A DNA stretch of 64,000 bases from Antechinus flavipes (lineage: Eukaryota). The stretch is taken from assembly GCF_016432865.1 (NCBI RefSeq), contig NC_067400.1:246264001-246328000 (forward strand), read 5' to 3'. Both the position numbers and the translations under genes were made by a program. Position 1 is the stretch's first letter, and each line of letters starts with the position of its first letter. Positions 10,025 through 52,721 of this stretch are shown here, piece after piece. A model generated the notes under the pieces. The model was not told where the DNA came from. It saw only the letters and a program-made list of their open reading frames with translations, and did not search any database.

Positions 10025-10252
10025 ATGTGCTACTACGGCAGCTACTATGGAGGCCTGGGCTATGGCTATGGCTCTGGTTATGGCTGTGGATGTGGCAGCT
10101 ACCGTGGCCTAGGCTATGGCTATGGCAGCTGTGGCTGTAGAGGCCTGGGCTATGGTGGCTATGGCTATGGAGGCCTGGGCTATGGTGGCTATGGCTATGG
10201 CTGCTGCCGCCCATCTTGCTGTGGAAGGTATTCTTCTTATGGCTTCTACTGA
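10025..10252 (+). CDS. KRTAP: High Gly-Tyr keratin-associated protein, KRTAP19/20-like, copy 1 (75 aa)
   Basis: Single-exon [19 protein letters not shown]...[16 protein letters not shown] with 29 Gly, 19 Tyr and 9 Cys. The N- and C-termini are typical of HGT KRTAP19/20 proteins. Kozak GAAACCATG, TATA box and AATAAA are present. The GTG start at 10010 in the ORF track is not the real start. Confidence 0.95.
10141..10200 (+). repeat. Perfect 30-bp tandem duplication inside the KRTAP CDS ([10 protein letters not shown] x2)
   Basis: AGGCCTGGGCTATGGTGGCTATGGCTATGG at 10141-10170 and 10171-10200; present in all six intact copies (one silent change in copy 2). Confidence 0.95.
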
Positions 10253-10539
10253 AAAACCACCTGCTCCTGCAGTGTCCTGGAATCCTCGGGCAACCCTGCT
10301 TGGTGTAATTCCATGGCATTTTAAAGACATCACTTCCACCTGCTTCTACACCTGGGTGATATAGGAGAGACACCACAAGAAGTCTCAGTATTCCTATGAA
10401 ACACTTAGAGCAGTGAAATGCCAGGGATTCAGAAGCACCCGGACCCTTCCCTCTGGGAAATGATACTGAATCTCAGCAGAGATTCCAGAAGGTATACTCA
10501 GCTCTGATACATCATGCTGAGAGATCTGTTATAATTTTT

Positions 10540-10545
10540 AATAAA
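10540..10545 (+). terminator. Polyadenylation signal of copy 1
   Basis: AATAAA ~290 bp after the stop; positionally conserved at 17578, 29027, 41463, 45323-45328 (minus strand), 48750, 53005 and 61668. Confidence 0.8.
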
Positions 10546-12600
10546 GTTATTTCACTTATTGATGAAACTGGTTTCATGACTTTTTCTTGATCTCTACCTA
10601 CATGCGTGTCAATCTCACACCACAAAATTATTCAATCTTGACTTACACTTGTATAACTGCAAAATCTTTGGTCTCCAATTCAGCTTTTGCAATGAAAGCA
10701 GAATTCTCCAGATTTCATTTTTTTAAAAAAAGCATTTTATTTTCATATTTAAAATAGGAATGCTATAGTACTTAAAATTAGTAATGTCATAATACATAAT
10801 GTCCAAGTCCCATTTTACTAGAGTCAACAATTTTATACTTATGTTATGTGGCTTATCTCTTACACTCCAAGTGCATGCTGACTGACTTTTTATGTTCAAA
10901 ATTTCTCAAAGGTTTCCATGTTCATTACTTCATGCCCATGGTTTTTCACTTCCAAATGTAAATAGTCCCTAATGACTGTCAGCAAGTGGAATAATCCACT
11001 GATTTCTAGTTATCTTTCATCATTTTGTTGTCAACAACCAATATGAAGTTTAAGAGCACAGTACAAGAGAGCCATATGTCAAACGTGAAGATTGTCATAC
11101 AACCATGCCCTTCAGATATGTTCTATCTCTTTCAGCAAACTAGACATCCAGTCCAGCTCACAACATTATTCTTGAGCTGAGGCTCTCCCATCCATGTAGG
11201 AATTTGGCTAATTTGTAAAGAATGTCTTCAAACACCTCAAACAACTACTCAAATTCAAGGAGGAAGAAAGTATCTTATTTATTTTGCCATATCCTGGCTT
11301 TGAACTTTGTACACACAAACTCATATCCCTCAGACAAATCTTTTGGGGGCAGAGGGAAGCTTAGTACTCAATCTAGAACCCAGCTGAAACTTAATTTTTA
11401 TAGGTTGAAATGTTTATTGCTTGAATTAGTATTTTATGTGGTAGAAGAAACACTACAAGTGCTACAAATAATGGACCTTATGTCTCTTGTGATTTGTCTT
11501 CAAATGAGTATCTGCTACTATAAGCTATCACTCATAGCCCTTATTTTTCATTTACAAAAAATCATGAATATTCTTATGAAGCCATCAGCTTTTCAACAGA
11601 GATATTTTCAGGGAACATAGTTCATTCAATTCCTCTTAGAACAAACCTCTAAATGATTCATCCATCTTTTCCAGAAAGACATGCTCTCAAGGTCACATCA
11701 ACAAATACTGTTCCATCAGGAAGAAGATGACTTCTCTTTTCAATAGCTCTCAGTGGGAAAAGAACTTTGCATTCTCTGTTACAAAGTTGGAAAACAGTTT
11801 TTAATGGGGTAAAAGACCATTCCAGTTTTATGTTCTCTCACATGGCAAGAAATAAAAAATATCTATTGCCTGTACTTTGTGGTGGTCATTTTTTTAAGTC
11901 CTTAAAAAAAACTGGCATAATTCCCTCAGGGTCTGTTAAACCTTCAGTTTCTTCAAAAAATCCCCAGAGATCCTGAGCTATAGGTTCTTTTCCCAAATGG
12001 TCTGGACTTCTCTAGATGCTCAATAGATTGGCTAAAGATGAGACATGTCCTGAGTAGTGCAAATTAATGATGATCCATCATCTCCAATTTACTGAATTCT
12101 AGCCCCTTATGCCCCTCTCCATGCAATCTCAAGATTTCTGTGGGAAGTCTGGCTGTCATAGAAAAACTTATTGGACTGTTATAAGCCAAAAAAGAAGTAC
12201 AACTTTTATTGTTGTCCCTACCACTTTAATCTTACTTTTCTTCTGATCACTTAATGTCTTTCTAAAATCCTCCACTAGAGTGTGAAAGTCTGCCTTTTCT
12301 CCATTACACTCTCTCTCTTGATAACAGTTTCAGCTGCCATGGATTCAGTTATTTTCTCTAACTCCCCACTCTCTGACATTCATTACCCTGGCTGAAGTTT
12401 CAGAAAAGCATTTCACCTGAACTCACAGGAATACCTGGATGACTATTTACATCAGATATTCACGATCCTCCCCAAATTCAGATTATCTGCACTTCCCTCT
12501 ACTTGCACATTTAGAAATGCCATGGCTATACTGAAATCAATAGACAACTCAGGCTCTTTTTTCACTGCCTTTGAAAGTCTTGTGGTCTGACAGAAAAAAT

Positions 12601-16976: not shown

Positions 16977-16983
16977 TATAAAA
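16977..16983 (+). promoter_or_regulatory. TATA box of copy 2
   Basis: TATAAAA 85 bp upstream of the ATG at 17062. Confidence 0.85.
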
Positions 16984-17061
16984 GTCCCCCTCAACATGTT
17001 CCCCTACACACTCACCCAAAGCAAACCCTGAGATCCTTCCAAATCTGTGAAACTTGAAACC

Positions 17062-17289
17062 ATGTGCTACTACGGCAGCTACTATGGAGGCCTGGGCTAT
17101 GGCTATGGCTCTGGTTATGGCTGTGGATGTGGCAGCTACCGTGGCCTAGGCTATGGCTATGGCAGCTGTGGCTGTAGAGGCCTGGGCTATGGTGGCTATG
17201 GCTATGGAGGCCTGGGTTATGGTGGCTATGGCTATGGCTGCTGCCGCCCATCTTGCTGTGGAAGGTATTCTTCTTATGGCTTCTACTGA
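17062..17289 (+). CDS. KRTAP: HGT keratin-associated protein, copy 2 (75 aa)
   Basis: Protein identical to copy 1; one silent GGC>GGT difference. Confidence 0.95.
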
Positions 17290-17756
17290 AAAACCACCTG
17301 CTCCTGCAGTGTCCTGGAATCCTCGGGCAACCCTGCTTGGTGTAATTCCATGGCATTTTAAAGACATCACCTTCCACCTGCTTCTACACCTGGGTGATAT
17401 AGGAGAGACACCACAAGAAGTCTCAGTATTCCTATGAAACACTTAGAGCAGTGAAATGCCAGGGATTCAGAAGCACCTGGACCCTTCCCTCTGGGAAATG
17501 ATACTGAATCTCAGCAGAGATTCCAGAAGGTGTACTCAGCTCTGATACATCATGCTGAGAGATCTGTTATAATTTTTAATAAAGTTATTTCACTTATTGA
17601 TGAAACTGATTTCATGACTTTTTCTTGATCTCCAGCTACATGCGTGTCAATCTCAAACCACAACTCATTCAATCTCAACTTAACACTTGGGTATAACTGC
17701 AAAATATTTGATCTCCAATTCATATTTTGCAATGAAAGGAGAATTCTCCAGATTTC

Positions 17757-17758
<2 letters not shown>

Positions 17759-17794
<36 letters not shown>
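17759..17794. repeat. (TG)n microsatellite in the 3' flank of copy 2
   Basis: 18 TG units; paralogous to 29204-29251; absent from the copy 1 flank. Confidence 0.95.
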
Positions 17795-17798
<4 letters not shown>

Positions 17799-18846
17799 AA
17801 AGCATTTTGTCTTCTTATTCAAAATGGGAATTCAGCAGCACTTAAATTTAGTAATGCCATAATGCATAATATCCAGGTCCCATTTTAGTACACTAAAAAA
17901 ATTTATCCCTATTTTATCTAGGCCTGTCTCTTACATTCCAAGTGCATACTTACTGGCTTTTAATATTCAAGATGTCTCAAAGATTTCCATGTTCATTATT
18001 CCAAGCTCATTGTTTATCACTTCCAAATGCAAATGGTCAGTAATGACTGTTACCATGTGGAATAATCCACTGATTTCTAGTTATCTTTCACCCCTTTGTT
18101 ATCAAATACCAATATGAAGTTTAAGAGGACAGGACAAATGAAAAACATACAACAAAAACTACAAAACAGAGTTATATGTCAAGCCTGAAGGGTTTCATTG
18201 AACTATGCCCTTCTATACATCTCTTCCAACAAACTACACAGCCAGTCCAGTTCACAACATTGTCCTTGAACTGAGGCTCTTCCACCCATGTGGGAATTTG
18301 ACTAATTTTAAAGAATGTCTTCAAACCCCTCAAATACCTAAACTCTCTAATTAACTCAGACTCCAAAGGGAAGAAAGTATCTTATAGAGGACCACAAATG
18401 GAGGGCAACCCTGGGCAAAATATAAAACCTTTAACTCAGTATGGAACCCTGCTGACATGTCTGGTTTGGCTCTCTATCCCCTCCTAACAGTTTTTCAGCC
18501 TTCCTGAGAAATCGGGGGTATGACAACTTGTGCTATATTTAAAGCAGAGTTGTCCTGTCATGGTAAGGAAACATCTATTAAATAATAGCAAGTTGGTGCA
18601 TATGCAGTATCCTATAAGTGCATGCACAGTACTCTATAGTTAGTGCATGAGCAAGACTACAATTATTTAAGAGTGTAAAGTATATAAAGAGGAAAGTTTC
18701 CTTAAATAACTGTACTCCTTTTTGAATATCATCCTGAGTCCTGCCTCTTCACTCCTCACCCGAGATCAGGGCTTGGGGCTGGTACGTCCATGAGCAGAAC
18801 CAGACATTCAGGGCTTAGGCTAATCCCGAAGTCCTCCCATAACAAC

Positions 18847-18864
18847 TGGTGCCCACTGTGGGAC
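18847..18864 (+). promoter_or_regulatory. Primer-binding site resembling tRNA-Lys1,2 PBS
   Basis: TGGTGCCCACTGTGGGAC immediately after the 5' LTR, versus canonical TGGCGCCCAACGTGGGGC. Confidence 0.7.
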
Positions 18865-18999
18865 CAGGAGCAGCTCAGCTGATGAAAACAGTGTGAGTTT
18901 GGGTGGGGCATCCCCATTCCCCAGGAACAGTGTAAGTATAAATACTCAACAGGAAGATTCAGCAAGGGCTAAGCTAGTCACTTTCATTTTCCAGCCAAA

Positions 19000-20700
19000 A
19001 TGAAAAATGCTTGGTTTGGTTAACAAAAGAGCAAGATTGTTAGTTATTCAGAAGTACATCACTGAGGTCTTAGATATTGTGGAGTCCACGTTTTCATAGC
19101 TCCCTACAGAGGAGATTTTGGAGCCAGAGAAGTGGAAGATAGTGAGAGAACAACTAACTGAATATTACCATATTGCAAGCCCTGGCTTAATCCTTGAACA
19201 CACATTCCTTATGTACAATGTTTTTAAAAAAATGTCTTTGAGAGATCTTTCAAGTTATCAAGAAAAGAGGGCTTTTAGTGTAGGGTGCCAAACAAAAGAG
19301 GATGAGGAAAATAAACAAAAAGATAGTGAACAACCCTAAAGGGTGGGGCATATTGAACAAAGACAAAGACAAAGATAGTTTGGGGAGGGTATAAAGGGTG
19401 TGTCACTTCCCCATTTCTCAGCCTGCCTGCAATTCCCCATGCACCCGCACCAAATCTCCCATTCCCTTATCCACTGTTTTTTCATCCTCCTTCCTCAAAT
19501 CTGCATTTGTGGGCAGGAGACAGAAAAACAGGAAGGGCAGTGGTGCTCTCAGCACTTTCAGTGTCGCCATCTTGTTCTCCTCTTATGTCCTGATTAGAAG
19601 AGGTACTGTTTAAGGCAAGGGAAGAGACCTGAGCCCTGAATATTTTCTTCTGCCCAAGCCCTGATCTCAAGTAAGGAGTGAAGAGGTGGGACTCAGAGAA
19701 TATTCAAATAGGAGTCTGTTTATTCAAGAAAGAGATGTGTTTGTATTGACAGTGGAAGCATACCCTGTAATTGAAGAACTGGAACTTAATGGGCCCCCAA
19801 GTCAAATTAGGACAGGACAAGCGCCTTTTGACCTAGAAGTTATCAAAGATTTGAAAAAGGCTTGCAACTTCTATGGGCCTATATGTTATGTTATGTAATG
19901 TTACAGTGTTATTAGAATATTTGGCTTATGAAATCTTAACCCCTAATGATTTGAAATCCACAGAAAAAGTACGTTTAGAATTTGGGCAGATTATTGTGGC
20001 TTTCTGAGTATAGTGAACTCTGTCAAACTCTGCCCAATGAAATGAGCAGTCTGAAGTTAATATACAAGTCACCTTTGATTAATTGGCAGGTGTAAGTTCA
20101 TATGCAGACAACTTAGCACAAATTAATCATCCTTTGGCAGCTTATGAGGAAATTCCTTCTGTTGCTAGCAAAGCATGGGGCATTCTCACAGGAAAACAAG
20201 ATAAAGGGGAAGCTTTCACAAAAATAGTGCAGAGTCCCAGTGAACCCTTTGCAGACTTTGTGGGATGTCTACAGACCATTGTCATATGGATTGTTGGGGA
20301 AATGAAGCAACAGAAATTATGATAAAACAAATTACTAGAGAAAACGCTAATGAGGAGTGTAAAAGAATTATACTGGGGCTCAAAAAGATTGCCCTTTTAC
20401 ATGAGATCATAAGGTGCTTTGCCAGAGTGGGCACATATACCTTTTATGCCCAGATTATGATGCAAGCCTTTCAAAACCTGAACACAGGAAAAACAGGGGA
20501 GGGACACCCAAGGAGACTTTTCAGTGCTTTCAATGTGGTAAAACAGGGTATTTGAGAGTTCAATGCTGGCAATAATAATAATAATAAAGAGAAAAAATGA
20601 AGTGAAAAAATGGGTAGAAGAACAAGACCTAAAACCCCATGTGCAAAATCTAATAAGAGTTTCTCCTGAGCATCAGAATGAAAATAGGCCCAGGGAAATG
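19000..20700 (+). pseudogene. Retroviral gag remnant (boundaries approximate)
   Basis: PFDLEVIKDLKKAC..YGP capsid motif (ORF 19686-19898); capsid C-terminal remnant IVQSPSEPFADFV (20083-20322); degenerate zinc knuckle CFQCGKTGYLRVQC near 20525-20568. Confidence 0.8.
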
Positions 20701-21142
20701 GAAGGTGGGGCTCAGAGCCGGGTCACAGGCACAAAACACTTGAGGCATGATGGCAAATATGCCAATGGGGCAGGGGGGTGGAAATTAGGACAAATAGAGT
20801 TGCATGCCAGCAGGACTACTATGATATTCCTTGGAAAGTTGAAACCTGTCGCCATCCAGCCTACAGACCCCTTCTCTTCACATTCAGTAGGCTTGACCAT
20901 TTCACCCTCTGACAATGCTTACAAAACAATGTCTATACATACACTGATCTGGGAAACTGGGGAATGTCCCAGTCACTAGTACAGGTAAACAATATGTGAT
21001 CTATCACAAAGGAGAAGTAGTAGCATCAGGCCTCCTGATACACAGTCCTGGTGTGCAATTTGGTGATATTTACTCAGATTTTGACTCCCAACAACAGAAT
21101 CCATGAATATTCTGTAAAGCAGATGTTACAGCTGACCATCCT

Positions 21143-21406
21143 ATGCTCACTATTTATGTAAATAGTGTACCACTAAAGGTGTTGGTAGACACAGGTGCAG
21201 ATTACACAGTCATTAGAAGCACCAGCTGGCCCAGTCAATGGCTAAAGATTGCAGCAAACTCCCATATGTCTGATATAGGAGAATCCAGGTCAACTGAACT
21301 TAGTGTCACCCCTTTAAGATGGAAATTTGAAAATAAAATGGGAGTGTTCACCCTATTTGTAGTTAAACAAATCCCTATCAATCTGTGGGAAAGACACATT
21401 TTATAG
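21143..21406 (+). pseudogene. Retroviral aspartic protease remnant
   Basis: ORF contains LKVLVDTGADYTVI (DTG active site). Confidence 0.85.
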
Positions 21407-21989
21407 TAGTTGAGATTACAATTGAGCACCTCAGCTTTTTAGAAAGAGCTATTGTTGAAGGCCTGCCAGCCCTTACCCCTATCCCTATCCAATGGAAAAT
21501 TAATATATCTCTGTAGGTGAAATAGTGATCCTTAACCAGTGGAAAAAATCAAGCCTTATTAGTTATAATACAAGAGCAATTTGCCCAAGGTCACCTACAG
21601 CCTTTTGTGAGCCTTTGGATTTCCTTGTATTTAATATAAAAAATAAATCTGGGAGGTGGAGGATGTTAACTAGTCTAAGAAAAGTAAATGATCAAATGGA
21701 CACAATGGAAGCTCTTCAGCCTGGGCTTCTACCCCTAACTCAATTGCCTAGAGAATATTCTCTTTGGGTATAGACGTTAAGGACTACTTCTACTTTATCC
21801 CTCTGGATAGAGAGGATATGAAAAGATTTGCTTTTTCAGTGTCCAGCAGAATTTAACCAAACCATATAAAAGATTTGAAGGGACAGTTTTATCACAGGGA
21901 ATGAAAAATACCACCCCCTCCATGTATCAGATATATGTAGCTGCTACTCTTGCTCCTGTAAGGAAAGCATTTCCAAAATGTAATTATAC

Positions 21990-22181
21990 TAGGGCTCCTC
22001 AAACTACAGTTTGTGGGCCAGATGTGGCAGCTGAGGACAATTATCCCCCTCACCCAGGGCTATGAAGTTTCTTTACTTAAAGGCCCACAAAACAAAGTTT
22101 TTGTTTTTACTATAGTCCGGCCTTCCAACAGTCTGAGGGACAGTGAACTGGCCCCCTATTTAAAAAGTTTGAGGATCTCTT
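21990..22181 (+). mobile_element. Non-autonomous hAT/Charlie DNA transposon (OC1-like MITE, 192 bp)
   Basis: Degenerate terminal inverted repeats TAGGGCTCCTCAAACT ... AGTTTGAGGATCTCTT (cf. CAGGGGTCCTCAAACT); decayed 8-bp TSD AATTATAC/TGTTATAG; provirus B has the empty site TATTATAC at ~31663-31670. Confidence 0.8.
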
Positions 22182-22950
22182 TGTTATAGTATATGGATGA
22201 CATTTTAGGATGTACCCATGAGGAGCAAATGTTAGAAGCATGCTTGCAGAAGACCATAGAAATATTAAGGTACTATTGGTTGAACATAGCACCAGAAAAA
22301 AGTCAAAGGCATGCTCCTTTTCAATATTTAGGAAATGAAGTATACCCTAAGGCACTTATGGTACAAAAACTTTCCTTAAGAACAGAGAAATTGACCACTT
22401 TAAATGACTTTCAGAAATTGATAACAGCTATCCTATGGATGTGTCCAGTGTTAGGCTTAACTACTCATCAACTACAATCATTGTATGATATCTTAAGGAG
22501 AGATACTGCTTTGGATTCTCCTTGTCAGCTTATGAAGGAAGTCCAAGAAGCTCTGAGTGACGTTGAACTGGCTTTATCCATTGAGGTTGAAAGACTCACT
22601 CAAAAACCCTTGGAAATAAAGTTTTTTACTGTAAAGGAAACACCTACAGAAATTCTCCATCCAAGGAGACAGTGTAATCAAATGGGTGATCCTCTTGGCA
22701 TAACCAGGCCAAAGCCTCATTTCTTATCCAGTGGTATATGATTCAGCTTATTCACTCAGATAAAATTTGTAGCATCTAACATATTTCAGCTTTTAAGGAA
22801 CTTCAGGAGCAAGTGCAAAGCCATCCAAGTAAGTATCATCTCTTGCATTTTCCTTCTCATTTTGGTCTTCCTGGACCTATTTTTTATGGAAACTCAGAAA
22901 CAGATTATCTTCTCGCTGTGGTAACCAACACTCTTCTATTTCAGGCCACC

Positions 22951-23531
22951 TGTTGGAATCCTTACAAAGTGTTAACTCATTTAGAGTTGATAGAGACAAT
23001 AATTATCTAATTTAGCATGGTTCAGTATGATCGATCTGATCTTACAAGTTATGGGCCATAACTTGAAACAAGGTACTAAGTGGAACTGATAGAAACAATG
23101 CTTGTGCTCACACCTTTAGAGAGTTCATATAAGCAAGAAGCTCTTAGGGCCAGAGAGCACTCTGGGACAGACACAGAGCACTCTAGGAGATTGAGAGCTA
23201 GAAGCCCTCTCTTGGAGGCAAGACAGATTCATTCCAACTTTCACCATGGTGCTGGCTGGAGACATTTGGAAAAAGAGAAGCCGAAGCTGGCAGAGGCAAA
23301 ACATTAGTGACAAGAGCTCTTGGAACCAAGAGCTAGGCCTCTAAGAAAGAGAACTGGGTCCCAGGGAGAAGATTCAGAAACCAGAGATAATAAAGGATTT
23401 GAACTTTTAATACCTGGCTGCATTTGGAGTGATTATTACTCTGAACCGAAACTAAGATTGCCTCCAGAAAACCTCCCCAAGAAACCTGCTCCCAGAGAGA
23501 ACCATTATATTTTAAAGAAGAGAACACCACA
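22951..23531 (+). mobile_element. Solo LTR nested in the integrase of provirus A
   Basis: TGTTGGAATC...CACCACA; 6-bp TSD GCCACC/GCCATC; empty site in provirus B at ~32831; same family as 44154-44836. Confidence 0.9.
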
Positions 23532-24385
23532 GCCATCCAAGAATCTCATTCTAAATATCAGGCCATATGAGCTTTATGTCTGCAGAACGTAAACAAAAGA
23601 AAAACAAATAAACAAAAACAAAAACAAAAAAACAAACAAACAAAAAAAAAGAACAATAGAAGAGGAAGTGAGGAGCATAGTAAAAGCCTGTTCAACTTGC
23701 TTCCCTTTCCATGCTCCTATGCTCATTCCAGGGAAGAATCCTGCTTCAATCTTCAAGGACAGATAATAGTAGAAAGAAAAAATATTAAGATATTTTATGG
23801 AAACTCAGAAACATATTATCTTCTCACCATGGTAACCAACACTCTTCTATTTCAGGCCACCTGTTGGAATCCTTACAAAGTGTTAACTCATTAGAGTTGA
23901 TAGAGACAATAATTATCTAATTTAGCATGGTTCAGTATGATTGATCTGATCTTACAAGCTATGTAAGATATTAAGATGCTCCTCCAAAAACAAAAAAGAG
24001 GGGGTCACCATGGGTAATTCTAGAGAATTTCTAAACTTAGCCCTTTATACTATCAATTTTCTGGTTTTTGATGAGCAGACAGGTTTTATAGCTCACCAAA
24101 AGGCTAATGTCCAGTGCAAACAACTCCAAAATCTTACATATTTGCCAGTTGATGTGGAGAGATCCGGAGAATAGTGAATAGAAGGAACCAGATAGATTAA
24201 CCACTTGAGGCAAAGGGTTTCTATCTACAGATAGAAAAAGAATCCAATGGGTGCTGATTTGTCCATCAAAGAGAGACAGAAAAAGAGAAGATCCTCGAAA
24301 TGAAGAAGGCCCAGGAAATTGACTCTGACTACACTTGCCACTGAAGGAACATGCTGTTAGCCCTATGTATATGGCAATTGACTAT

Positions 24386-24500
24386 GCAGGACTTCAAAGC
24401 CTGCAGGAATCATTGGGTTCCCTGATACATGAAGTGATGGACACTAGATTGGCTTTGGACTCTCTTATGGCTACTAAATGATGTGTGCATGTGGCCTCGC
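24386..24500 (+). pseudogene. env TM remnant with immunosuppressive-domain-like motif (provirus A)
   Basis: Manual translation AGLQSLQESLGSLIHEVMDTRLALDSLMATK*CVHV; SU region absent. Confidence 0.65.
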
Positions 24501-27500: not shown

Positions 27501-28425
27501 CACCTTCTTCATTAGCTGACCCCTTCATACCTTCCCAGACTATGTTTAATACTCCTCCCAACATTTTGTATTTCTGTCCCATGTAGTCTACCTGCTTTCA
27601 CTATAACAAGCCTTTTCCTACTTCTTCTCTTTGACTTTTCTCTGTCTGGTTGCCTACAATGCCAAAATTCCTCTCCATTCTACTTTTCTCTCATCTGACT
27701 TTTAATAGTCCAAAAGAGTCTTGGGTTAAATCCTATCTAGAACATGTGACATTACCCCATTGTTGTAAGAGCTTGTACCTATGCCTCTGAAATCCCCTAT
27801 CATCTTCCCCCTCTACCCCCCCCCCCATTTTGTGGCAGGTTTCTTACATTTTTATTGTCCTTAAAACTTTAGACTTTTCTGAGAACTCAGGATTCTGGTG
27901 ACATTTCTTTCTATTTCCATCCCTAAATGCGAAGTACAGGTAGAGTATAAACAATGTTTATAGTGGTTTGGGAATGATAATTAGATTACCTAATTCCATG
28001 CATTTTTCTCTCTACATTTATCTCAATTTCAATTTGAAACTTGCTGTCACTTCATTCTCAAAGAGAACTGTTCAAAAGAAATAGAATTCTGAAGCACACT
28101 GAAAGAATCAGAGGCTAGGCTTTCAAGCTGTGAAATAAGGGCAATATCCCCAAAAGAAGCCTACCATGAAGACTGTGTAGAGCACCAGCCACATTAACTA
28201 CATATGCTTTGGCAACATTACAATCATTTCTCATCACAGGAATGACATCCTTGGTAGAATCTTCATAGAGAAACATCATATCAAGAGAAAACAACACCCT
28301 TAATGAGCTGGAGAAATTCTTCTCAAGCAACAAACTATGACAAGAATGTGATTTTGCTCTTGTTAAGTTCATTAATGGGAATTATGCAATTTAGAATTAA
28401 TGGGCCACACGTCCTTCTGAAAGAG

Positions 28426-28432
28426 TATAAAA
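28426..28432 (+). promoter_or_regulatory. TATA box of copy 3
   Basis: TATAAAA 85 bp upstream of the ATG at 28511. Confidence 0.85.
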
Positions 28433-28510
28433 GTCCCCCTCAACATGTTCCTCTACACACTCACATAAAGCAAACTCTGACATCCTTCCAAATCTGTGAA
28501 ACTTGAAACC

Positions 28511-28738
28511 ATGTGCTACTACGGCAGCTACTATGGAGGCCTGGGCTATGGCTATGGCTCTGGTTATGGCTGTGGATGTGGCAGCTACCGTGGCCTAGGC
28601 TATGGCTATGGCAGCTGTGGCTGTAGAGGCCTGGGCTATGGTGGCTATGGCTATGGAGGCCTGGGCTATGGTGGCTATGGCTATGGCTGCTGCCGCCCAT
28701 CTTGCTGTGGAAGGTATTCTTCTTATGGCTTCTACTAA
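28511..28738 (+). CDS. KRTAP: HGT keratin-associated protein, copy 3 (75 aa)
   Basis: Nucleotide-identical to copy 1 except for a TAA stop. Confidence 0.95.
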
Positions 28739-29203
28739 AAAACCACCTGTGCCTGCAGTGTCCTGCAGTTGTTCGTGCAACCCTGCTTGGTGTAATTCCA
28801 TGGCATCTTAAAGACATCACCTTCTACCTGCTTCTACATCTTTGTGATATAGGAGAGACACCACAAGAAGTCTCAACATTCCTAAGAAACACTTAAAGCA
28901 GTGAATGCCAGGGATTCAGAAGCACGCAGATCCTTCCCTCTGGGAAATGATACTGAATCTCAGCAGAGATTCTAGAAGGTGTACTCAGCTCTGATATATC
29001 ATGCTGAGAGCTCTGTTATAATTTTTAATAAAGTTATTTCACTTATTAATGAAACTAGTTTCATGATTTTTCTTTGATCTCCACCTACATGCGTGTCAAC
29101 CTCACACCACAAAGTTATTCAATCTTAACTTACACTTTTATAACTGCAAAATCTTTGGTCTCCATTCTTTTGCAATGAAAGCAGAATTCTCGAGATTTCA
29201 TTA

Positions 29204-29212
29204 TGTGTGTGT

Positions 29213-29251: not shown

Positions 29252-29255
<4 letters not shown>

Positions 29256-30388: not shown

Positions 30389-30426
<38 letters not shown>

Positions 30427-39019: not shown

Positions 39020-39063
39020 GATTTTCCCCTCTCTCTCTGTCTCTTTGTCTCTGTCTCTCTCAG

Positions 39064-39111
<48 letters not shown>

Positions 39112-39154
39112 GCTCTCTTTGTGTCTCTCTCTCTATCTGTCTGTCTGTCTCTCT
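39020..39154. repeat. Compound (CT)n/(CTGT)n microsatellite running into an N gap
   Basis: Visible CT-rich run before N39155-39384; a similar remnant follows the gap at 15066-15135. Confidence 0.9.
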
Positions 39155-40844
39155 NNNNNNNNNNNNNNNNNNNNNNNNNNNNNNNNNNNNNNNNNNNNNN
39201 NNNNNNNNNNNNNNNNNNNNNNNNNNNNNNNNNNNNNNNNNNNNNNNNNNNNNNNNNNNNNNNNNNNNNNNNNNNNNNNNNNNNNNNNNNNNNNNNNNNN
39301 NNNNNNNNNNNNNNNNNNNNNNNNNNNNNNNNNNNNNNNNNNNNNNNNNNNNNNNNNNNNNNNNNNNNNNNNNNNNNNNNNNNNAAGGCAAAAATCTCTC
39401 CTTAGCACCAGTTCTACATCATGAACTGTCTATTTGGGAATTTTAAATTGATGTCTCCTAACATCTCAAAACCCCCAAAACTATAACACATCTCACCCTG
39501 CTTCTTCAAAAGCAACTTATCTATTCAAAACTGCTCTTAAAATGTCTAGAGAATTGACATCAAACCAAGGAATCAGGTGGTCAGACCCAGAGAAGGCTTT
39601 GAGTTCTATTATAGAATACCTATCTAATTAGTTAGCAAAACTTCTTTCTCCTTTCCCAAAGTCTCTGCAATCCTAACACTCTTGCTACTTTTTAAAAACC
39701 CCATTTTACATCAGCCTTCACAAGACTCTCAGCAAGATCTTTTGATTAGTCTCCCTACCTCATTTGTTTTCCCACCCAGATCCATCCTCTGATCAACTGA
39801 TCAAGGGATTGTCCTAGACAATTTGATTCCTCTGTGTTATCCTTAATTCCCAATTGCTATACTAATATTCTGGTAAACTCCAGTTTCTTTTTGTTTTGTA
39901 CTGGTTTAATTAGATAACCCCTCTCTGGCACTTCACCTTCTTCATTAGCTGACCCCTTCATATCTTCCAAGACTGGGTATGTTTAATACTCCTCCCAACA
40001 TTTTGTAGTTCTGCCCCATGTAGTCCACCTGCTTTCACTATAACAAGCCTTTTCCTACTTCTCCTTGACTTTTCTCTGTCTGGTTGCCTACAATGCCAAA
40101 ATTCCTCTCCATTCTACTTCTCTCTCATCTGACTTTTAATAGTCCAAAAGAGTCTTGGGTTAAATCCTATCCAGAACATGTGACATTACCCCATTGTTCT
40201 AGGAGCTTGTACCTATGTCTCTGAAATCCCCTATCACCTCCCCGCCATTTTGTGACAGGTTTCTTACATTTTCATTGTCCTTAAAACTTTAGACTTTTCT
40301 GAGAACTCGGGATTCTGATGACATTTCTTTCTATTTCCATCCCTAAATGCAAAGTACAGGTGGAGTATAAACAATGCTTATAATGGTTTGGGAATGATAA
40401 TTAGATTACCTAATTCCATGCATTTTTCTCTCTACATTTATCTCAATTTCAATTTGAAACTTGCTGTCACTTCATTCTCAAAGAGAACTGTTCAAAAGAA
40501 ATAGAATTCTGAAGCACACTGAAAGAATCAGAGGCTAGGCTTTCAAGCTGTGAAATAAGGGCAATATCCCCAAAAGAAGCCTACCATGAAGACTGTGTAG
40601 AGCACCAGCCACATTAACTACATATGCTTTGGCAACATTACAATCATTTCTCATCACAGGAATGACATCCTTGGTAGAATCTTCATAGAGAAACATCATA
40701 TCAAGAGAAAACAATACCCTTAATGAGCTGGAGAAATTCTTCTTAAGCAGCAAACTATGATAAGAATGTGACTTTGCTCTTATAAATTCATTAATGGGAA
40801 TTATGCAATTTAGAATTAATGGACCACACCTCCTTCTGAAAGAG

Positions 40845-40851
40845 TATAAAA
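40845..40851 (+). promoter_or_regulatory. TATA box of copy 4
   Basis: TATAAAA 85 bp upstream of the ATG at 40930. Confidence 0.85.
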
Positions 40852-40929
40852 GTCTCCCTCAACATGTCCCTCTACACACTCACCCAAAGCAAACCCTGAC
40901 ATCCTTCCAAATCTGTGAAACTTGAAATC

Positions 40930-41157
40930 ATGAGCTACTACGGCAGCTACTATGGAGGCCTGGGCTATGGCTATGGCTCTGGTTATGGTTGTGGATGTGG
41001 CAGCTACCATGGCCTAGGCTATGGCTATGGCAGCTGTGGCTGTAGAGGCCTGGGCTATGGTGGCTATGGCTATGGAGGCCTGGGCTATGGTGGCTATGGC
41101 TATGGCTGCTGCCGCCCATCTTGCTGTGGAAGGTATTCTTCCTATGGCTTCTACTAA
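40930..41157 (+). CDS. KRTAP: HGT keratin-associated protein, copy 4 (75 aa; C2S, R27H)
   Basis: Five nucleotide differences from copy 1 including the TAA stop; TATA box and AATAAA (41463) intact. Confidence 0.95.
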
Positions 41158-41693
41158 AAAACTACCTGCTCCTGCCATGTCATGGAATCCTTCTGCAACC
41201 CTGCTTGGGATAATTCTATATTATAAGGACATCACATTCCATCTGCCTCTGAAGCTTGGTGACATAAGAGAAATACCAGAAGAAGTTTTGTCATATTAAT
41301 GAAACAGAGCAGTAAAGTGCCAGAATTCAAAAGCATCCAGACTCATTTTTCTGAGAATGATGCAGAATCTCAGCTGTCATGAAGAAGATGCCCCAACAAC
41401 ATTTCCAGCAAGTTTACTCAGCTCCAATATATCACAGCTGATGGGGTTTGTTAAGATTTTCTAATAAACTTATTTCACTGTATAACAAATTCTGTTTCAC
41501 CTCTCTTTCTTGATCTCCATCTACATGAGTGTCAGCCTTACACCACAAAGAAATGTTCAATCTTGACTTACATTTGTATGTTATTGCAGAATCTTTAACC
41601 TCCAATTCATTTTTTGCAATAATAGTAGAACTCTTCAGATTCCATTTGGAAAAAAAGTATTTTCTTACTTAAATGTCTTTAAAAATTGGAATT

Positions 41694-44836: not shown

Positions 44837-45635
44837 GTTGACAACAAAATGATGAAAGGTAACTGGAAATCAGTGGATTATTCCACATGCTGACAGTCAT
44901 CAGGGACTATTTGTATTTGGAAGTGAAAAACCATGGGCATGAAGTAATGAACATGGAAACCTTTGAGAAATTTTGAACATAAAAAGTCAGTCAGTATGCA
45001 CTTGGAGTGTAAGAGATAGATAACATAATATAGGCATAAAATTGTTGACTCTAGTAAAATGGGACTTATACATTATGTATTATGACATTACTAAATTTAA
45101 GTACTATAGCATTCCTATTTTAAATATGAAAATAAAATGTTAAAAAAAAAAAAAGGAATCTGGAGAATTCTGCTTTCATTCCAAAAGATGAATTGGAGAC
45201 TAAAGATTTTATTATACAAGTGTAAGTCAAGATTGAATAACTTTGTGGTGTGAGATTGACACACATGTAAATGGAGATCAAGGAAAAGTCATGAAACCAA
45301 TTTCATTAATAAGTAAAATAACTTTATTAAAAATTATAACAGATCTCTCAGCATGATATATAAGAGCTGAGTACACTTGCTGAAAATGTTGCTGGGGGCA
45401 CCTCATGACAGCTGAGATTAAGTGTCATTTTCCAGAAGGAAGGGTCCAGGTGCTTCTGAATCTCTGGCATTCACTGCTCTAAGTGTTTCATAGGAATACT
45501 GAGACTTCTTGTGGTGTCTCTCCTATATCACCCAGGTGTAGAAGCAGGTGGAAGGTAATGCCCTTAAAATGCCATGGAATCACACCAAGCAGGGTTGCAC
45601 AAGGATTCCAGGTAATTGCAGGAGCAGATGGTTTT

Positions 45636-45863
45636 TCAGTAGAAGCCATAAGAAGAATACCTTCCACAGCAAGATGGGCGGCAGCAGCCATAGCCATAGC
45701 CACCATAGCCCAGGCCTCCATAGCCATAGCCACCATAGCCCAGGCCTCTACAGCCACAGCTGCCATAGCCATAGCCTAGGCCACGGTAGCTGCCACATCC
45801 ACAGCCATAACCAGAGCCATAGCCATAGCCCAGGCCTCCATAGTAGCTGCCATAGTAGCTCAT
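45636..45863 (-). CDS. KRTAP: HGT keratin-associated protein, copy 5, inverted (75 aa; C2S)
   Basis: Two nucleotide differences from copy 1; TATA at 45942-45948 (85 bp spacing) and poly(A) signal at 45323-45328 on the minus strand. Confidence 0.95.
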
Positions 45864-45941
45864 GGTTTCAAGTTTCACAGATTTGGAAGGATATCAGGGT
45901 TTCCTTTGTGTGAGTGTGTAGAGGAACACGTTGAGGGGGAC

Positions 45942-45948
45942 TTTTATA
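45942..45948 (-). promoter_or_regulatory. TATA box of copy 5
   Basis: TTTTATA on the plus strand is TATAAAA on the minus strand. Confidence 0.85.
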
Positions 45949-48638: not shown

Positions 48639-48780
48639 GGGAAATGATGCAGAATATCAGCTGCCATGAGGAAGATGCCCTCAACAACATTTCCAACAAG
48701 TTTTTTCAGTTCTGATATATCATGGCTGAGAGATCTGTTAAAATTTTCTAATAAATTTATCTTGCTGATTAACAAAACTG
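48639..48780 (+). pseudogene. Orphan KRTAP 3'UTR (ghost locus; promoter and CDS missing)
   Basis: GGGAAATGATGCAGAATATCAGCTGCCATGAGGAAGATGCC...AATAAA(48750) is homologous to 41355-41470; downstream flank homology continues. Confidence 0.85.
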
Positions 48781-49130
48781 TTTTTACCACTCTTCTTGAT
48801 CTCTATCTACAGAGGGTGTCAACCTCACATTACAAAGAGTCTTTTAATCTTGACTTACACTTACATGTCACTTCAGAAGTTTAATTTCCACTTCATCTTT
48901 TACAATGAAGATTTCTCCAGATTTCTTTTGGGGAAAAAAAATTTATTTTCTTACTTAAATATCTTAAAATTTGAATTCCGCAGTATTAAAATCTTAGTAC
49001 TCCAAAAAGTCCAGGACCCATTTTATTAGTGTCAAAGAATTTAGCCTTATAATCCATAGCCCTTCTCTTATATAGTGTGCATAATAACTCGGTTTTTATA
49101 TTAAATTTCTCTCAAAGGTTTCCATGTTCA

Positions 49131-49260
49131 GGGAGCTAGGTGGCACAGTGGTTAGAGCACCAGCTCTGAAGTCAAGAGGAAGGACCTGAGTTCAAATCTG
49201 GTCTGAGACACTTAACACTTCCTAGCTGTGTGACCCTGGGCAAGTGCCTCTGAGGAAAAA
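49131..49260 (+). mobile_element. tRNA-derived CORE-SINE (marsupial WSINE1/Mar1-like)
   Basis: GGGAGCTAGGTGGCACAGTGGTTAGAGCAC (A box), GAGTTCAAATC (B box), CTAGCTGTGTGACCCTGGGCAAG core; A-rich end. Confidence 0.85.
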
Positions 49261-49390
49261 AGTTGTTCATTACCTCATCTTCGTGACATAACTTTCAAAT
49301 GCAAATGGTCCCTAATGACCATGAACATGTAGATTAATCCATTGATGTCTAGTTATCTTCCACCACTTTGTTATCAACCATCAATCTGAT

Positions 49391-49646
49391 ATTCCCCCAC
49401 TGAGACCAAGCTAGTCTGAAAGACTCGTCAGAAAGCTAGCCGAGCCCCAAGTGAAGGAGACAAGAGATTCATTCCATCTTTGTGCTGGCTGGAGGCTGAA
49501 GAAAGCAGAGGCAGAGGCTGAAGGGCAAAACCTTTGGATTTGGAGACATTCGGAGGGAGCTCTTGGAACCAAGCAGAGAGATAGGCCTCTAAGAATCTAG
49601 CTATCCAGGCCCAAGGAAAGAAACAAGACTTGGAAGGAGAAATAAT
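49391..49646 (+). mobile_element. Internal fragment of the 22951/44154 LTR family lacking both termini
   Basis: GTGCTGGCTGGAGGCTGAAGAAAGCAGAGGCAGA and CTCTTGGAACCAAGCAGAGAGATAGGCCTCT match ~44556-44650; no TG/CA ends or TSD. Confidence 0.75.
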
Positions 49647-52408
49647 CACAAAAACTGCAAGAGAAAATCATATGTTAAACCTAAAAGTTATCATGGAACC
49701 ATGTCCTTCTGTTCAGTTCTATCTCCTCTAGCAAACTTCACAACCAGTTCAGCTCACAACATTATCCTTGAGCTGAGGTTCTATCATCCATGAATTGGAC
49801 TAATTTTTAAAGAATGTGTTCAAATCCTTCAAAGCACTAAATTCTCTGATTCACTCAAACTCCCAGGGATAAAAAGTATCATCTGTAGTGCTCCAGCACC
49901 TGGCTTTGGATCTTGTTTGCATCCCCAAAATCATGTCTTTCAGATGAGTGCTTAGAAAGAAGGAGTTTCGTCTTCTACCTAACAGATAGCTGGAACTTAA
50001 TCAGTTTTTATAGATTGAAATATTTATTACTTGAATTAATGTTTCACACAGTAAAGAAAACACCATAAGTGCTAGAAGCAATGAACTTTATATCTTCTCT
50101 GATTTATCTTAAAATGAATGCATGTGGCTGTAGCTATCACTCATAACTCTTCTTCTCCATTCAGAAAAAAAGCATGGATATTCCAAAGGATCCACTGGCT
50201 TTTCAACAGTAATACTCTCTGGAGATCCATTCCATTCAGTTCCTCCCAAAACATATTTCTAAATGATTCCTAAATCTTTTTCAGGGAGACTTGCCCTCAG
50301 TATCACTTCAAGAGAAACTTCTCCTTCAGCATGACTTCTCTCTTCAACTTCTCTCAGTGGGAAAAGAGATTTTCATTATCTGTAACAAACCTGAAAATTT
50401 GTTTAATGGAGAGTCTTGTGTTCTGACCTAAAATTTAAGAGAAACTGTTATCTCAAAACTTCCCAGTAATTTCCTCTTGTCCACAACTAATGGCCTCCAT
50501 CTTCTTTCTTCTTGATCTCCATTTGGTTCTTGAAAGTCCTGGCCAGTTGGTGTTCCTTTAAAGCTTGGATACTCTTCTTCCAGAAAGGTGGTCAAAGGTG
50601 AACAATTGGCTTGTTGTCTAAAGCCTATTGAGTAAAATAAAAGTTGCTCTCTTTTCTTTCCTCTCCATTAAGTTTTTCCTTGTGGTAAGAAAGTAAACTT
50701 TTTCAAGCTCCCAGAACATCAGGGNNNNNNNNNNNNNNNNNNNNNNNNNNNNNNNNNNNNNNNNNNNNNNNNNNNNNNNNNNNNNNNNNNNNNNNNNNNN
50801 NNNNNNNNNNNNNNNNNNNNNNNNNNNNNNNNNNNNNNNNNNNNNNNNNNNNNNNNNNNNNNNNNNNNNNNNNNNNNNNNNNNNNNNNNNNNNNNNNNNN
50901 NNNNNNNNNNNNNNNNNNNNNNNNNNNNNNNNNNNNNNNNNCATCTCTAGAAAAAGGCAAAAATCTCTCCTCAGCACCAGTCTTACGTCATGAATTCTCT
51001 GTTTAAGAATTTTAAATTGATGTCTCCTACACCCCTCAGAACCTCCAGAATTGAAAAAAAAAAATCTCATCCTTCTTCAAAACAACCTTTCTGTTCAAAA
51101 CTTCTCTAAAAATTTCAAGAAAACTGCCATCAAATAAGGGAATCTGATTCTCTGAGAATCTCACACTCAGGGAAGGTCTTGACCACTCTCTATCATCACA
51201 CCTCTCCTGTTAGCAAAACATCTCCTTCCTGTGGAATTCTAGTTTCTAGAATTCCACACTTCTTGCTACTTATACAATATCCACCTTAAATCAGGCTTCA
51301 CATCGTTGCAAAATCTTTTGATTAGTTTCCCTCCCTTAATCTTTCCACTCAGATCTATGCTCTGATCAACTAATCAACAGTTGTTCTAAACAGTCTCTTG
51401 ATTTCTCTGCCTTTATAATTACTCCTAACCCCAAATCACTGCACCAACATTCTTGTAAACTCCAGTTTCTTTTTCTTTTGTACTGGTTTAGGTAGATACC
51501 CTCTATCTGATATTCACATACTATATTAGCTGATCTGCTTCCTACCTTTCCAGACTGAGAACACTTAATTCTCCTCCCCATATTTTATGTTTCTGTCCAA
51601 TATAGCCTACCTGCTTTCACTAAGACAATGTCTCTTCTGCATGACTTTCTTTACCCTCTCTGGCTACACACCCTGGCAAGAATCTTCTCCTCTCTCTTCC
51701 ACTCAACTCTGACTTTCCCTAATCCAAAAGAGTCTCAGGTAACATCCCATCTATAAGGAATCTCAGGTGAAATCTTATCTATGACATATGACAACCTCAT
51801 TGTCCAAGATTTGTACCTTTGCCTTTGAAATCTCCTATTATCTCCTCATATTTGTGTCAGGTTTCTTGTATTTTCATATTTTCATAGACCTTAGACCTGC
51901 CTGAGAACAGGGAATGTTTCTCGCCTGGAATGTACTGGCAGTGGAGTGTATATATTGTATACTTTACTTTGGGAATGGTAGTTTGATTCCCTAATCCTAT
52001 ATATTTTTTCTCCACAATTATTTCAGCCTCTGTCTGAAATTTGCTGTCACTTCATTCTCAAAGAGCACTGATCAAAGGAAATAGAATTATAAAGCACACT
52101 CAAAGAATCAGAAGGCCAGGCTTTCAAGTTGTGAAACAAGAACAAGATCCCCAGAAGATGACTATCAACAAGCACACCAGCCACATTAACTACATATTTT
52201 TGGCAACATTATAATCATTTCTCATAAAAGGAATGACATCCTCAATAGAATGTTCATAAAGAAATAGCATATCAAGAAAAAATACTTTTAATGAGCTGGA
52301 GAAATTCTTCTTGAGCAATAAACTATGACAAGAATGTAATTTTGCCCAAGTTTATTAATGGGAATTATGCAATTTAGAATTAATGGGCCACACCTCCTTC
52401 TGAAAGAG

Positions 52409-52415
52409 TATAAAA
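52409..52415 (+). promoter_or_regulatory. TATA box of copy 6
   Basis: TATAAAA 85 bp upstream of the ATG at 52494. Confidence 0.85.
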
Positions 52416-52493
52416 GTCCCCCTCAACGTGTTCCTCTACACACTCACACAAAGGAAACCCTGAGATCCTTCCAAATCTGTGAAACTTGAAACC

Positions 52494-52721
52494 ATGAGCT
52501 ACTACGGCAGCTACTATGGAGGCCTGGGCTATGGCTATGGCTCTGGTTATGGCTGTGGATGTGGCAGCTACCGTGGCCTAGGCTATGGCTATGGCAGCTG
52601 TGGCTGTAGAGGCCTGGGCTATGGTGGCTATGGCTATGGAGGCCTGGGCTATGGTGGCTATGGCTATGGCTGCTGCCGCCAATCTTGCTGTGGAAGGTAT
52701 TCTTCTTATGGCTTCTACTGA
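52494..52721 (+). CDS. KRTAP: HGT keratin-associated protein, copy 6 (75 aa; C2S, P63Q)
   Basis: Two nucleotide differences from copy 1, both non-synonymous and none silent; AATAAA at 53005. Confidence 0.95.

What the first reader, a model, noticed from the sequence alone, without database searches (positions are those of the whole stretch)
10025..52721. Gene-conversion islands: six near-identical KRTAP CDSs inside much older duplicated flanks
Seen: versus copy 1, the 228-bp CDSs differ by 1 (copy 2), 1 (copy 3), 5 (copy 4), 2 (copy 5) and 2 (copy 6) nucleotides. Copy 6 has zero silent differences. Its upstream flank (~51000-52000) nevertheless aligns only loosely, with many substitutions and indels, to that of copy 1 (~7650-8460, 9300-9600), and each unit carries its own old TE insertions. 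Copy 6 also shares with copies 1-3 a ~35-bp 3'UTR deletion that copies 4 and 5 and the ghost locus lack. Established: purifying selection alone does not hold silent sites and UTR indels identical, whereas ectopic conversion does, as in histone and Hsp70 clusters. Inference: active concerted evolution of a dosage-amplified hair protein.
Basis: partly seen in the sequence, partly recalled or inferred. Interest (0 to 1): 0.75.

Follow-up and report, generated by a model that had tools for sequence, protein, structure and literature searches.

The report
Hair-protein gene array homogenised by conversion
Six tandem copies of a small glycine/tyrosine-rich hair-matrix gene (KRTAP) have almost identical coding sequences inside much more diverged duplicated DNA, a well-supported but already familiar case of paralogues being kept alike by gene conversion.

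Summary
Six intact 228-bp, single-exon KRTAP genes (Pfam PF11759) differ from copy 1 by 1, 1, 5, 2 and 2 bases. Silent-site divergence is 0-5.6%. Adjacent non-coding DNA differs by 5-50%.

The CDS-only island picture is too simple:
- All six copies share one about 275-bp island, from about -35 to about +240. Its 3' edge is sharp and lies about 15 bp past the stop codon.
- Pair-specific near-identical tracts also lie in non-coding DNA. Copies 3 and 4 share 331 identical bp upstream. Copies 1 and 2 differ at 4 of 576 positions from 5'UTR to polyA site.
- Segment trees conflict significantly.
- An old, broken ERV marks units 2 and 3 as true sisters, yet copy 2's transcript region is nearly identical to copy 1's.

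Related arrays in Antechinus and the Tasmanian devil show normally diverged coding sequences. So selection alone does not freeze silent sites in this family.

Best reading: ectopic short-tract gene conversion, with selection retaining homogenised coding tracts, as described for KRTAP1.

The gaps are one CT-rich microsatellite, repeated upstream of five of the six copies, and touch no gene.

This is a new member of a known kind, of moderate interest.

The parts
9940..10570 (+). Copy 1 gene. TATAAAA at 9940, CDS 10025-10252 (75 aa), AATAAA at 10540.
16977..17608 (+). Copy 2 gene. TATAAAA at 16977, CDS 17062-17289, AATAAA at 17578.
28426..29060 (+). Copy 3 gene. TATAAAA at 28426, CDS 28511-28738 (TAA stop), AATAAA at 29027.
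40845..41500 (+). Copy 4 gene. TATAAAA at 40845, CDS 40930-41157 (C2S, R27H, TAA stop), AATAAA at 41463. Its 3'UTR is of the old type and keeps the 23 nt at 41371-41393.
45295..45948 (-). Copy 5 gene, inverted. CDS 45636-45863, TATAAAA starting at 45948, AATAAA at 45328. Keeps 20 nt at 45395-45414. Unit homology covers 43874-44153 and 44837-46376.
52409..53040 (+). Copy 6 gene. TATAAAA at 52409, CDS 52494-52721 (C2S, P63Q), AATAAA at 53005. Its flanks are the most diverged of the six.
9996..10570 (+). Near-identical tract between copies 1 and 2. The partner is 17033-17608. There are 4 mismatches in 576 columns, from -29 in the 5'UTR to about the polyA site.
27964..28294 (+). Exact 331-bp non-coding tract shared by copies 3 and 4. 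The partner is 40384-40714. It spans -547..-217, outside the transcript.
10466..10485 (+). Junction of the derived 3'UTR deletion of about 24 nt. The identical junction string is also at 17504, 28953 and 52931.
48639..49952 (+). Partial 'ghost' unit holding only the 3'UTR end and the 3' flank, with no CDS. It keeps the ancestral 24 nt at 48658-48681.
61071..61675 (+). Seventh, diverged paralogue and pseudogene. The CDS remnant at 61156-61355 has a frameshift after about codon 21 and a 27-nt deletion. It is about 68% identical to the units and was used as the outgroup.
18385..25235 (+). Old, broken ERV in the unit 2 spacer. LTRs at 18385-18844 and 24743-25235 are 72% alike. Its duplicated counterpart lies at about 29540-34605 in unit 3. 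Units 1 and 6 lack it. It marks units 2 and 3 as true sisters.
39029..39384 (.). CT-rich microsatellite plus an N gap. The same repeat and gap recur at 7427-7637, 14935-15133, 26824-26986 and 50725-50941.

Best explanation
The window holds a tandem array of six intact genes, one of them inverted, plus one pseudogene and one truncated unit. The genes are single-exon, high-glycine-tyrosine keratin-associated protein (HGT-KRTAP) genes.

Shown:
- The duplication units are old. Spacers are 70-90% identical. One unit pair shares a very old ERV that other units lack.
- The coding sequence and a few tens of bases either side are 97.4-100% identical in all six copies, silent sites included.
- Other tracts of 100-580 bp are identical or nearly so only between particular pairs.

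Inferred mechanism: repeated ectopic, non-allelic, short-tract gene conversion between the paralogues, including the inverted one. This is DNA-templated repair of breaks using a neighbouring copy. Conversions that homogenise the coding region are probably retained by selection for a uniform protein, while non-coding conversions drift. That would explain why only the CDS is uniform across all copies and why diversity rises sharply about 15 bp after the stop codon. The near-identical CDS would in turn provide the homology that keeps the process going.
For: Identity of the genes:
- Pfam KRTAP scores 32.2 bits against a cut-off of 21.1.
- The protein is 39% Gly, 25% Tyr and 12% Cys.
- TATAAAA lies at -85 and AATAAA 284-308 nt after the stop in every copy.
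- The best relatives are Antechinus and Sarcophilus KRTAP-like proteins.

Island:
- Silent-site p-distance (pS) is 0-0.056, mean about 0.025. Mean K is about 0.12 at -520..-300, about 0.16 in the 3'UTR and about 0.31 in the 3' flank.
- Pairwise diversity (pi) is 0-0.03 in the CDS and jumps to 0.17 within about 15 bp after the stop.
- Segregating silent sites are 4/53 against 104/302 in the 3'UTR, p = 3e-5.

Recombination:
- Runs of concordant polymorphic sites: c3-c4 73 sites, c1-c2 64, c1-c6 31 and c4-c5 21 (each with 0 of 5000 permutations as long), and c1-c5 45 sites (p = 0.0006).
- Segment trees conflict.
- AU tests: the 3' flank rejects (c1,c2) at p = 4e-6 and (c3,c6) at p = 9e-4. The 3'UTR rejects (c3,c4,c5) at p = 0.004.
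- All four gametes are present at CDS sites 4 and 227.
- Both main tracts have two-sided boundaries, which points to conversion rather than a single crossover.

Independent genealogy:
- The spacers 17290-26823 and 28739-39154 are collinear at 83-90%, including a shared broken ERV. Units 1 and 6 have the empty site.
- Even so, c1 and c2 differ at only 4/576 positions across the transcript, while c2 and c3 differ at 24/312 in the 3'UTR.

Controls:
- Antechinus L001 paralogues have CDS p-distance 0.10-0.17 and 9 silent plus 8 replacement codon differences, with flanks at 0.21-0.32.
- Devil L002 paralogues have CDS p-distance 0.063-0.068, length differences of 51-60 bp, and flanks at 0.09-0.22.

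Precedent: the same coding-versus-flank pattern and explanation has been described for KRTAP1 (bioRxiv 10.1101/282418).
Against: - The assembly has gaps that suggest short-read scaffolding, so copy-specific variants and exact tracts are unverified.
- No orthologous array from another species could be fetched. The classic test, paralogues clustering by species, is therefore missing. L001 and L002 are only about 70-76% identical to the units and belong to other sub-clusters.
- GC3 is only 0.55, so there is no clear footprint of GC-biased conversion.
- A boundary this close to the stop codon could also be produced mainly by selection.
- The literature reports few conversions in HGT-KRTAPs (PMC2528016, PMC4180150).
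- The clades tested by AU were chosen after seeing the trees of other segments.
Confidence: 0.8

Rival explanations
1. Assembly artefact. Near-identical paralogous segments were collapsed, consensus-polished or gap-filled from one another in a short-read assembly. This would exaggerate identity and create chimeric units.
For: Estimated-length N gaps recur at a microsatellite in every unit, which is typical of short-read scaffolds. Exact shared stretches of up to 331 bp are in the size range where misjoins happen. Read evidence could not be obtained.
Against: Collapse needs sequences that are already nearly identical; reads 10-30% diverged do not co-assemble. An artefact can therefore erase a few differences but cannot create the island. 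Six of the eight variable CDS sites are private to one copy. The c1-c2 tract still carries 4 mismatches. Each gene lies at least 1.5 kb inside a single contig. Independent data sets from several organisms hold 37-78% of the 31-mers of the unit 6 stretch.
Confidence: 0.07
2. Birth-and-death evolution with strong purifying selection only. Under this reading the coding sequences stay alike because the protein, and perhaps the mRNA or codon usage, is constrained, with no sequence exchange.
For: The 3' edge of the island sits about 15 bp past the stop codon. Replacement differences are rarer than silent ones: 3 of about 172 sites against 4 of about 53.
Against: Silent sites are 4-12 times less diverged than the neighbouring DNA. 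In two related arrays silent sites and coding length diverge freely. Selection cannot explain pair-specific identical non-coding tracts, conflicting segment trees or the shared 3'UTR deletion in copy 6.
Confidence: 0.04
3. Array turnover by unequal crossing-over and recent partial duplications, rather than non-crossover conversion. This would produce hybrid units whose gene-proximal parts are young.
For: 5' and 3' flanks of the same gene have different nearest relatives. Gene-proximal flanks of c1-c2 are 87-89% identical, but the distal spacer is only about 75%. A truncated unit and an inverted unit show that the array has been rearranged. Sawyer-type tests cannot separate the two mechanisms, a limitation also stated in PMC2528016.
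Against: The best tracts are internal, with older sequence on both sides. The inverted copy 5 shares tracts with direct copies, whereas a crossover would invert the intervening DNA. Unit-specific TE content is preserved around the homogenised genes.
Confidence: 0.09

Closest known systems
Coding-region-limited concerted evolution of mammalian KRTAP1 genes (Zhou et al., bioRxiv 10.1101/282418)
   Same: Both are tandem single-exon KRTAP paralogues whose coding regions, silent sites included, are homogenised while flanks diverge normally. In both, similarity decays close to the start and stop codons. The proposed cause is the same: short-tract gene conversion plus selection in the coding part.
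   Different: This case is a high-glycine-tyrosine KRTAP rather than a high-sulphur one, and it is in a marsupial. Homogenisation is far tighter (0-6 differences in 228 bp, no length variation). Clear conversion tracts also lie in UTRs and upstream DNA. The cross-species tree test that defines the KRTAP1 case could not be run.
Family-wide surveys of KRTAP evolution (Wu et al. 2008, PMC2528016; Khan et al. 2014, PMC4180150)
   Same: Both surveys establish concerted evolution by gene conversion or recombination as a normal feature of KRTAP clusters, and they use GENECONV-type shared-fragment tests.
   Different: They report frequent conversion in high-cysteine KRTAPs but few events in HGT-KRTAPs. 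Only 4 gene pairs were found, and none in subfamily 20, which is expanded in opossum. This array is an HGT array with strong homogenisation. CDS-only tests lack power when whole coding sequences are identical.
Classical concerted evolution in histone, Hsp70 and globin paralogues
   Same: Ectopic conversion keeps coding regions alike inside diverged flanks. This comparison rests on established knowledge and was not tested here.
   Different: GC enrichment of converted tracts is described for histones, as cited in PMC2528016. It is not evident here, where GC3 is 0.55.

Membership tests
High-glycine-tyrosine keratin-associated proteins (Pfam PF11759 KRTAP) | Match to the family profile above the curated cut-off | tested here: met
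   Copy 1 scores 32.2 bits and copy 6 scores 27.4 bits, against a cut-off of 21.1.
High-glycine-tyrosine keratin-associated proteins (Pfam PF11759 KRTAP) | Small, intron-less, Gly/Tyr-rich protein with Cys-rich ends | tested here: met
   The product is 75 aa from one uninterrupted ORF, with 39% Gly, 25% Tyr and 12% Cys. A TATA box and a polyA signal flank the ORF.
High-glycine-tyrosine keratin-associated proteins (Pfam PF11759 KRTAP) | Placement in a named subfamily (KRTAP6, 19, 20 and so on) by orthology | tested here: inconclusive
   The nearest database proteins carry automated names: 'KRTAP6-2-like' in Antechinus and 'KRTAP20-2-like' in Sarcophilus. Subfamily 6 is reported to be eutherian-specific (PMC4180150). 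No tree was built.
High-glycine-tyrosine keratin-associated proteins (Pfam PF11759 KRTAP) | Expression in the hair follicle or hair cortex | not testable with these tools
Concerted evolution by ectopic gene conversion | Paralogue identity in the converted part exceeds the neutral expectation from the flanks, at silent sites too | tested here: met
   Silent-site p-distance is 0-0.056 against flank K of 0.05-0.5. Fisher p = 3e-5 and 0.002.
Concerted evolution by ectopic gene conversion | Significant shared fragments and phylogenetic incongruence along the sequence | tested here: met
   Sawyer-type permutation test, segment trees and AU tests, four-gamete violation, and the ERV marker contradicted by the transcript tract.
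Concerted evolution by ectopic gene conversion | Paralogues within a species are closer to each other than to their orthologues in related species | not testable with these tools
   Only non-orthologous sub-clusters could be fetched: L001 and L002, about 70-76% identical.
Concerted evolution by ectopic gene conversion | GC enrichment of converted tracts (biased gene conversion) | tested here: inconclusive
   CDS GC is 0.56 against 0.31-0.42 in the flanks, but GC3 is only 0.55 and the GC is largely set by Gly codons.
Birth-and-death evolution with purifying selection only | Silent sites and flanks diverge alike, and only replacement sites are conserved | tested here: not met
   Silent sites are 4-12 times less diverged than the flanks. 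The control arrays do behave this way.

The most novel reading that the evidence does not exclude
Some of the homogenisation may be templated by the mRNA, through cDNA-mediated conversion of an intron-less gene. The c1-c2 tract runs from inside the 5'UTR (-29) to about the predicted polyA site (+545). Copy 6's resemblance to copies 1-3 also collapses at about +545..+560. If this were so, an HGT-KRTAP array, a class reported to convert rarely, would be kept uniform by a transcript-bounded mechanism plus selection. The evidence does not exclude this for those two tracts. However, the 331-bp c3-c4 tract lies wholly outside the transcript, which shows that ordinary DNA-templated conversion operates here and is sufficient.
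Probability: 0.07. Interest if true: 0.6.

Novelty: new member of a known kind. Interest (0 to 1): 0.35.

Why it matters
This is a clean, internally dated example of coding-centred concerted evolution in a hair-matrix gene array. The order of events is ERV insertion, then unit duplication, then homogenisation. It lies in the KRTAP class (high glycine-tyrosine) and in a lineage (marsupial) where surveys found little conversion. Those surveys may therefore have lacked power when whole coding sequences are identical.

For annotators and population geneticists there is a practical warning. Copy-specific variants in this array cannot be trusted from short reads. Orthology of these genes should be assigned from flanks and TE markers, not from coding sequence. 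It does not reveal a new mechanism.

Tried and rejected
All later work on them was local alignment and scripting.
- Orthologues. The best hits were Antechinus P0001 and devil P0002. Their loci L001 and L002 proved to be other sub-clusters, so I used them as controls rather than orthologues. I judged hopping along those chromosomes through called genes unlikely to reach an unannotated array and did not try it.
- GC-biased conversion footprint: not evident.
- A simple gradient of identity with distance from the CDS: not monotonic, so not claimed.
- A possible extra KRTAP remnant at 59494-59515 ('MSYYASY' then a stop): a local tblastn found no further similarity, so I treat it as chance.
- Earlier notes searched by words for KRTAP and conversion: none found.

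Full report
**What is there**

The window contains six intact 228-bp ORFs, at 10025, 17062, 28511, 40930, 45863 (minus strand) and 52494. Each encodes a 75-aa protein that is 39% Gly, 25% Tyr and 12% Cys. The protein matches Pfam PF11759 (KRTAP) above its curated cut-off. Every copy has TATAAAA at -85 and AATAAA 284-308 nt after the stop. They therefore look like complete single-exon genes of about 0.6 kb.

Two further relics exist. One is a seventh paralogue, diverged and frameshifted, at 61156-61355. The other is a truncated unit at 48639-49952 that holds only the 3'UTR end and flank.

The nearest database proteins are automated 'KRTAP6-2-like' (Antechinus flavipes) and 'KRTAP20-2-like' (Sarcophilus harrisii) entries. 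This fits a dasyurid-like marsupial, but the species was not identified.

**Check of the observation**

Differences from copy 1 are 1, 1, 5, 2 and 2, at eight variable sites, and copy 6 has no silent difference from copy 1.
- Copy 6's flanks align to copy 1's at 71-77% with many indels.
- The 3'UTR deletion shared by copies 1, 2, 3 and 6 is real and has an identical junction in all four. It is about 24 nt, not about 35. Copies 4 and 5, the ghost unit and the pseudogene keep the ancestral bases, so the deletion is derived.

**Gaps**

Five of the six N runs lie at one homologous position, 1.5-2.6 kb upstream of copies 1, 2, 3, 4 and 6. Each sits inside or beside a CT-rich simple repeat, and the left and right borders are homologous from unit to unit. 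They are the same hard-to-assemble microsatellite repeated in those units.

No gap touches a gene or a tract. Each gene lies at least 1.5 kb inside one contig. One consequence is that every unit-to-unit join passes through a gap, so the order of the units rests on scaffolding.

**Size and shape of the island**

- Silent-site differences (pS) are 0-0.056, mean about 0.025.
- Mean K is about 0.12 at -520..-300, about 0.16 in the 3'UTR and about 0.31 in the 3' flank.
- Pairwise diversity is 0-0.03 across the CDS. It jumps to 0.17 within about 15 bp after the stop codon. On the 5' side it rises from about -35.
- Segregating silent sites are 4 of about 53, against 104/302 in the 3'UTR (p = 3e-5) and 72/276 upstream (p = 0.002).
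- All six coding sequences have the same length. Control arrays in this family vary in length.

**The pattern is a mosaic, not only a CDS island**

| Pair | Tract (relative to ATG) | Identity | Elsewhere in the same pair |
|---|---|---|---|
| c3-c4 | -547..-217, non-coding | 331 bp exact | K = 0.34 in the 3'UTR |
| c1-c2 | -29..+545, 5'UTR to polyA site | 4 mismatches in 576 | K = 0.11-0.18 on either side |
| c1-c5 | 3' flank | closest pair | |
| c5-c6 | promoter and 5'UTR | closest pair | |
| c6 vs c1-c3 | about -140..+560 | 90-100% | 60-87% outside |

- A Sawyer-type permutation test gives significant concordant runs for most pairs. For c3-c4, c1-c2, c1-c6 and c4-c5, none of 5000 permutations gave a run as long.
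- Maximum-likelihood trees of five segments disagree.
- AU tests reject one segment's clades on another segment's data. The 3' flank rejects (c1,c2) at p = 4e-6 and (c3,c6) at p = 9e-4. The 3'UTR rejects (c3,c4,c5) at p = 0.004.
- Inside the CDS, sites 4 and 227 show all four gametes.

**An independent genealogy from a rare insertion**

The whole spacers downstream of copy 2 (17290-26823) and copy 3 (28739-39154) are collinear at 83-90% identity. Both include a broken ERV with gag, protease, RT and integrase remnants. The LTRs of this ERV are only 72-80% alike. Units 1 and 6 have the empty site.

The order of events is therefore:
1. Unit 1 split from the ancestor of units 2 and 3.
2. The ERV inserted.
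3. Units 2 and 3 duplicated.

Yet copy 2's transcript region is 99.3% identical to copy 1's, while it differs from its true sister copy 3 at 24/312 positions in the 3'UTR. This is direct evidence of sequence transfer between non-sister units. An L1 at about 34852-37661 is private to unit 3.

**Controls**

- Antechinus locus L001 has three paralogues of a neighbouring HGT-KRTAP sub-cluster. CDS p-distance is 0.10-0.17, with 9 silent and 8 replacement codon differences for the equal-length pair. Flanks are at 0.21-0.32.
- Devil locus L002 shows CDS p-distance of 0.063-0.068, coding-length differences of 51-60 bp, and flanks at 0.09-0.22.

So in this family purifying selection lowers coding divergence only about 1.5- to 3-fold and does not freeze silent sites or length. 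The six-copy array here is a clear outlier.

**Mechanism**

Shown:
- Old units.
- A CDS uniform across all six copies.
- Pair-specific tracts with boundaries on both sides, including tracts in an inverted copy and tracts outside the transcript.

Inferred:
- Repeated short-tract ectopic gene conversion, templated by DNA.
- Selection retaining conversions that homogenise the coding part.

[quoted passage not shown] The 331-bp exact tract suggests at least one event within roughly the last million years under typical mammalian rates. That figure rests on an assumed rate.

**Rivals**

- Assembly collapse cannot create identity from 10-30% divergence, but it could erase a few differences or misassign variants. 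All further work on them was local.
- Purifying selection alone fails on silent sites, on the non-coding tracts and on the controls.
- Unequal crossing-over probably contributed to the history of the array. The evidence is the truncated and inverted units, and gene-proximal flanks of c1-c2 that are younger than the distal spacer. It does not explain the internal tracts.

**Comparison with what is known, and novelty**

Concerted evolution by conversion is established for KRTAP clusters. Surveys found it mainly in high-cysteine subfamilies and rarely in HGT subfamilies (PMC2528016, PMC4180150). This array is an HGT counter-example in a marsupial, and its homogenisation is unusually tight. The kind of phenomenon, and even the contrast between coding region and flanks, is already described.

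The defining cross-species test could not be run, and neither could the checks of expression and dosage.

Verdict: real on present evidence (confidence about 0.8), a new member of a known kind, of moderate interest.

Noticed in passing
window 18385-25235 and about 29540-34605: An old, broken ERV (gag p24, protease, RT, RT thumb, integrase) was duplicated together with the gene unit. Its LTR pairs are only 72-80% alike. Units 1 and 6 have the empty site. It is useful as a dating and orthology marker.
   Followed up: partly
window 11269-12597 against 25235-26571 and 37662-39012: The distal spacer of unit 1 is only about 75-76% identical to the spacers of units 2 and 3. The gene-proximal flanks of c1-c2 are 87-89% identical. 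Gene-proximal DNA therefore looks younger than distal DNA, through either older, longer conversions or a later, smaller duplication. This is not resolved.
   Followed up: partly
window 7427-7637, 14935-15133, 26824-26986, 39029-39384, 50725-50941: The same CT-rich microsatellite is unassembled (N) at a homologous place upstream of copies 1, 2, 3, 4 and 6, so the order of units depends on scaffolding only.
   Followed up: yes
window 43874-46376: Copy 5 lies in a short inverted unit. Homology runs only from -513 to about +1026, plus 280 bp, between copy 4 and the ghost unit. It still shares exact tracts with the direct copies, which indicates conversion between inverted repeats.
   Followed up: partly
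window 61156-61355: A diverged KRTAP pseudogene has a frameshift after about codon 21 and a 27-nt in-frame loss in the repeat part. Its TATAAAA and AATAAA are kept.
   Followed up: partly
window 17759-17795 and 29204-29252: Homologous (TG)n microsatellites lie in the 3' flanks of units 2 and 3, with 18.5 and 24.5 repeats.
   Followed up: no
L001 10001-12748 (Antechinus flavipes CM028219.1): The database protein P0001 (132 aa) is a gene model that splices two neighbouring single-exon KRTAP genes into one, which looks like an annotation artefact.
   Followed up: partly
window 34852-37661: An L1 insertion is private to the unit 3 spacer and absent from the collinear unit 2 spacer.
   Followed up: partly
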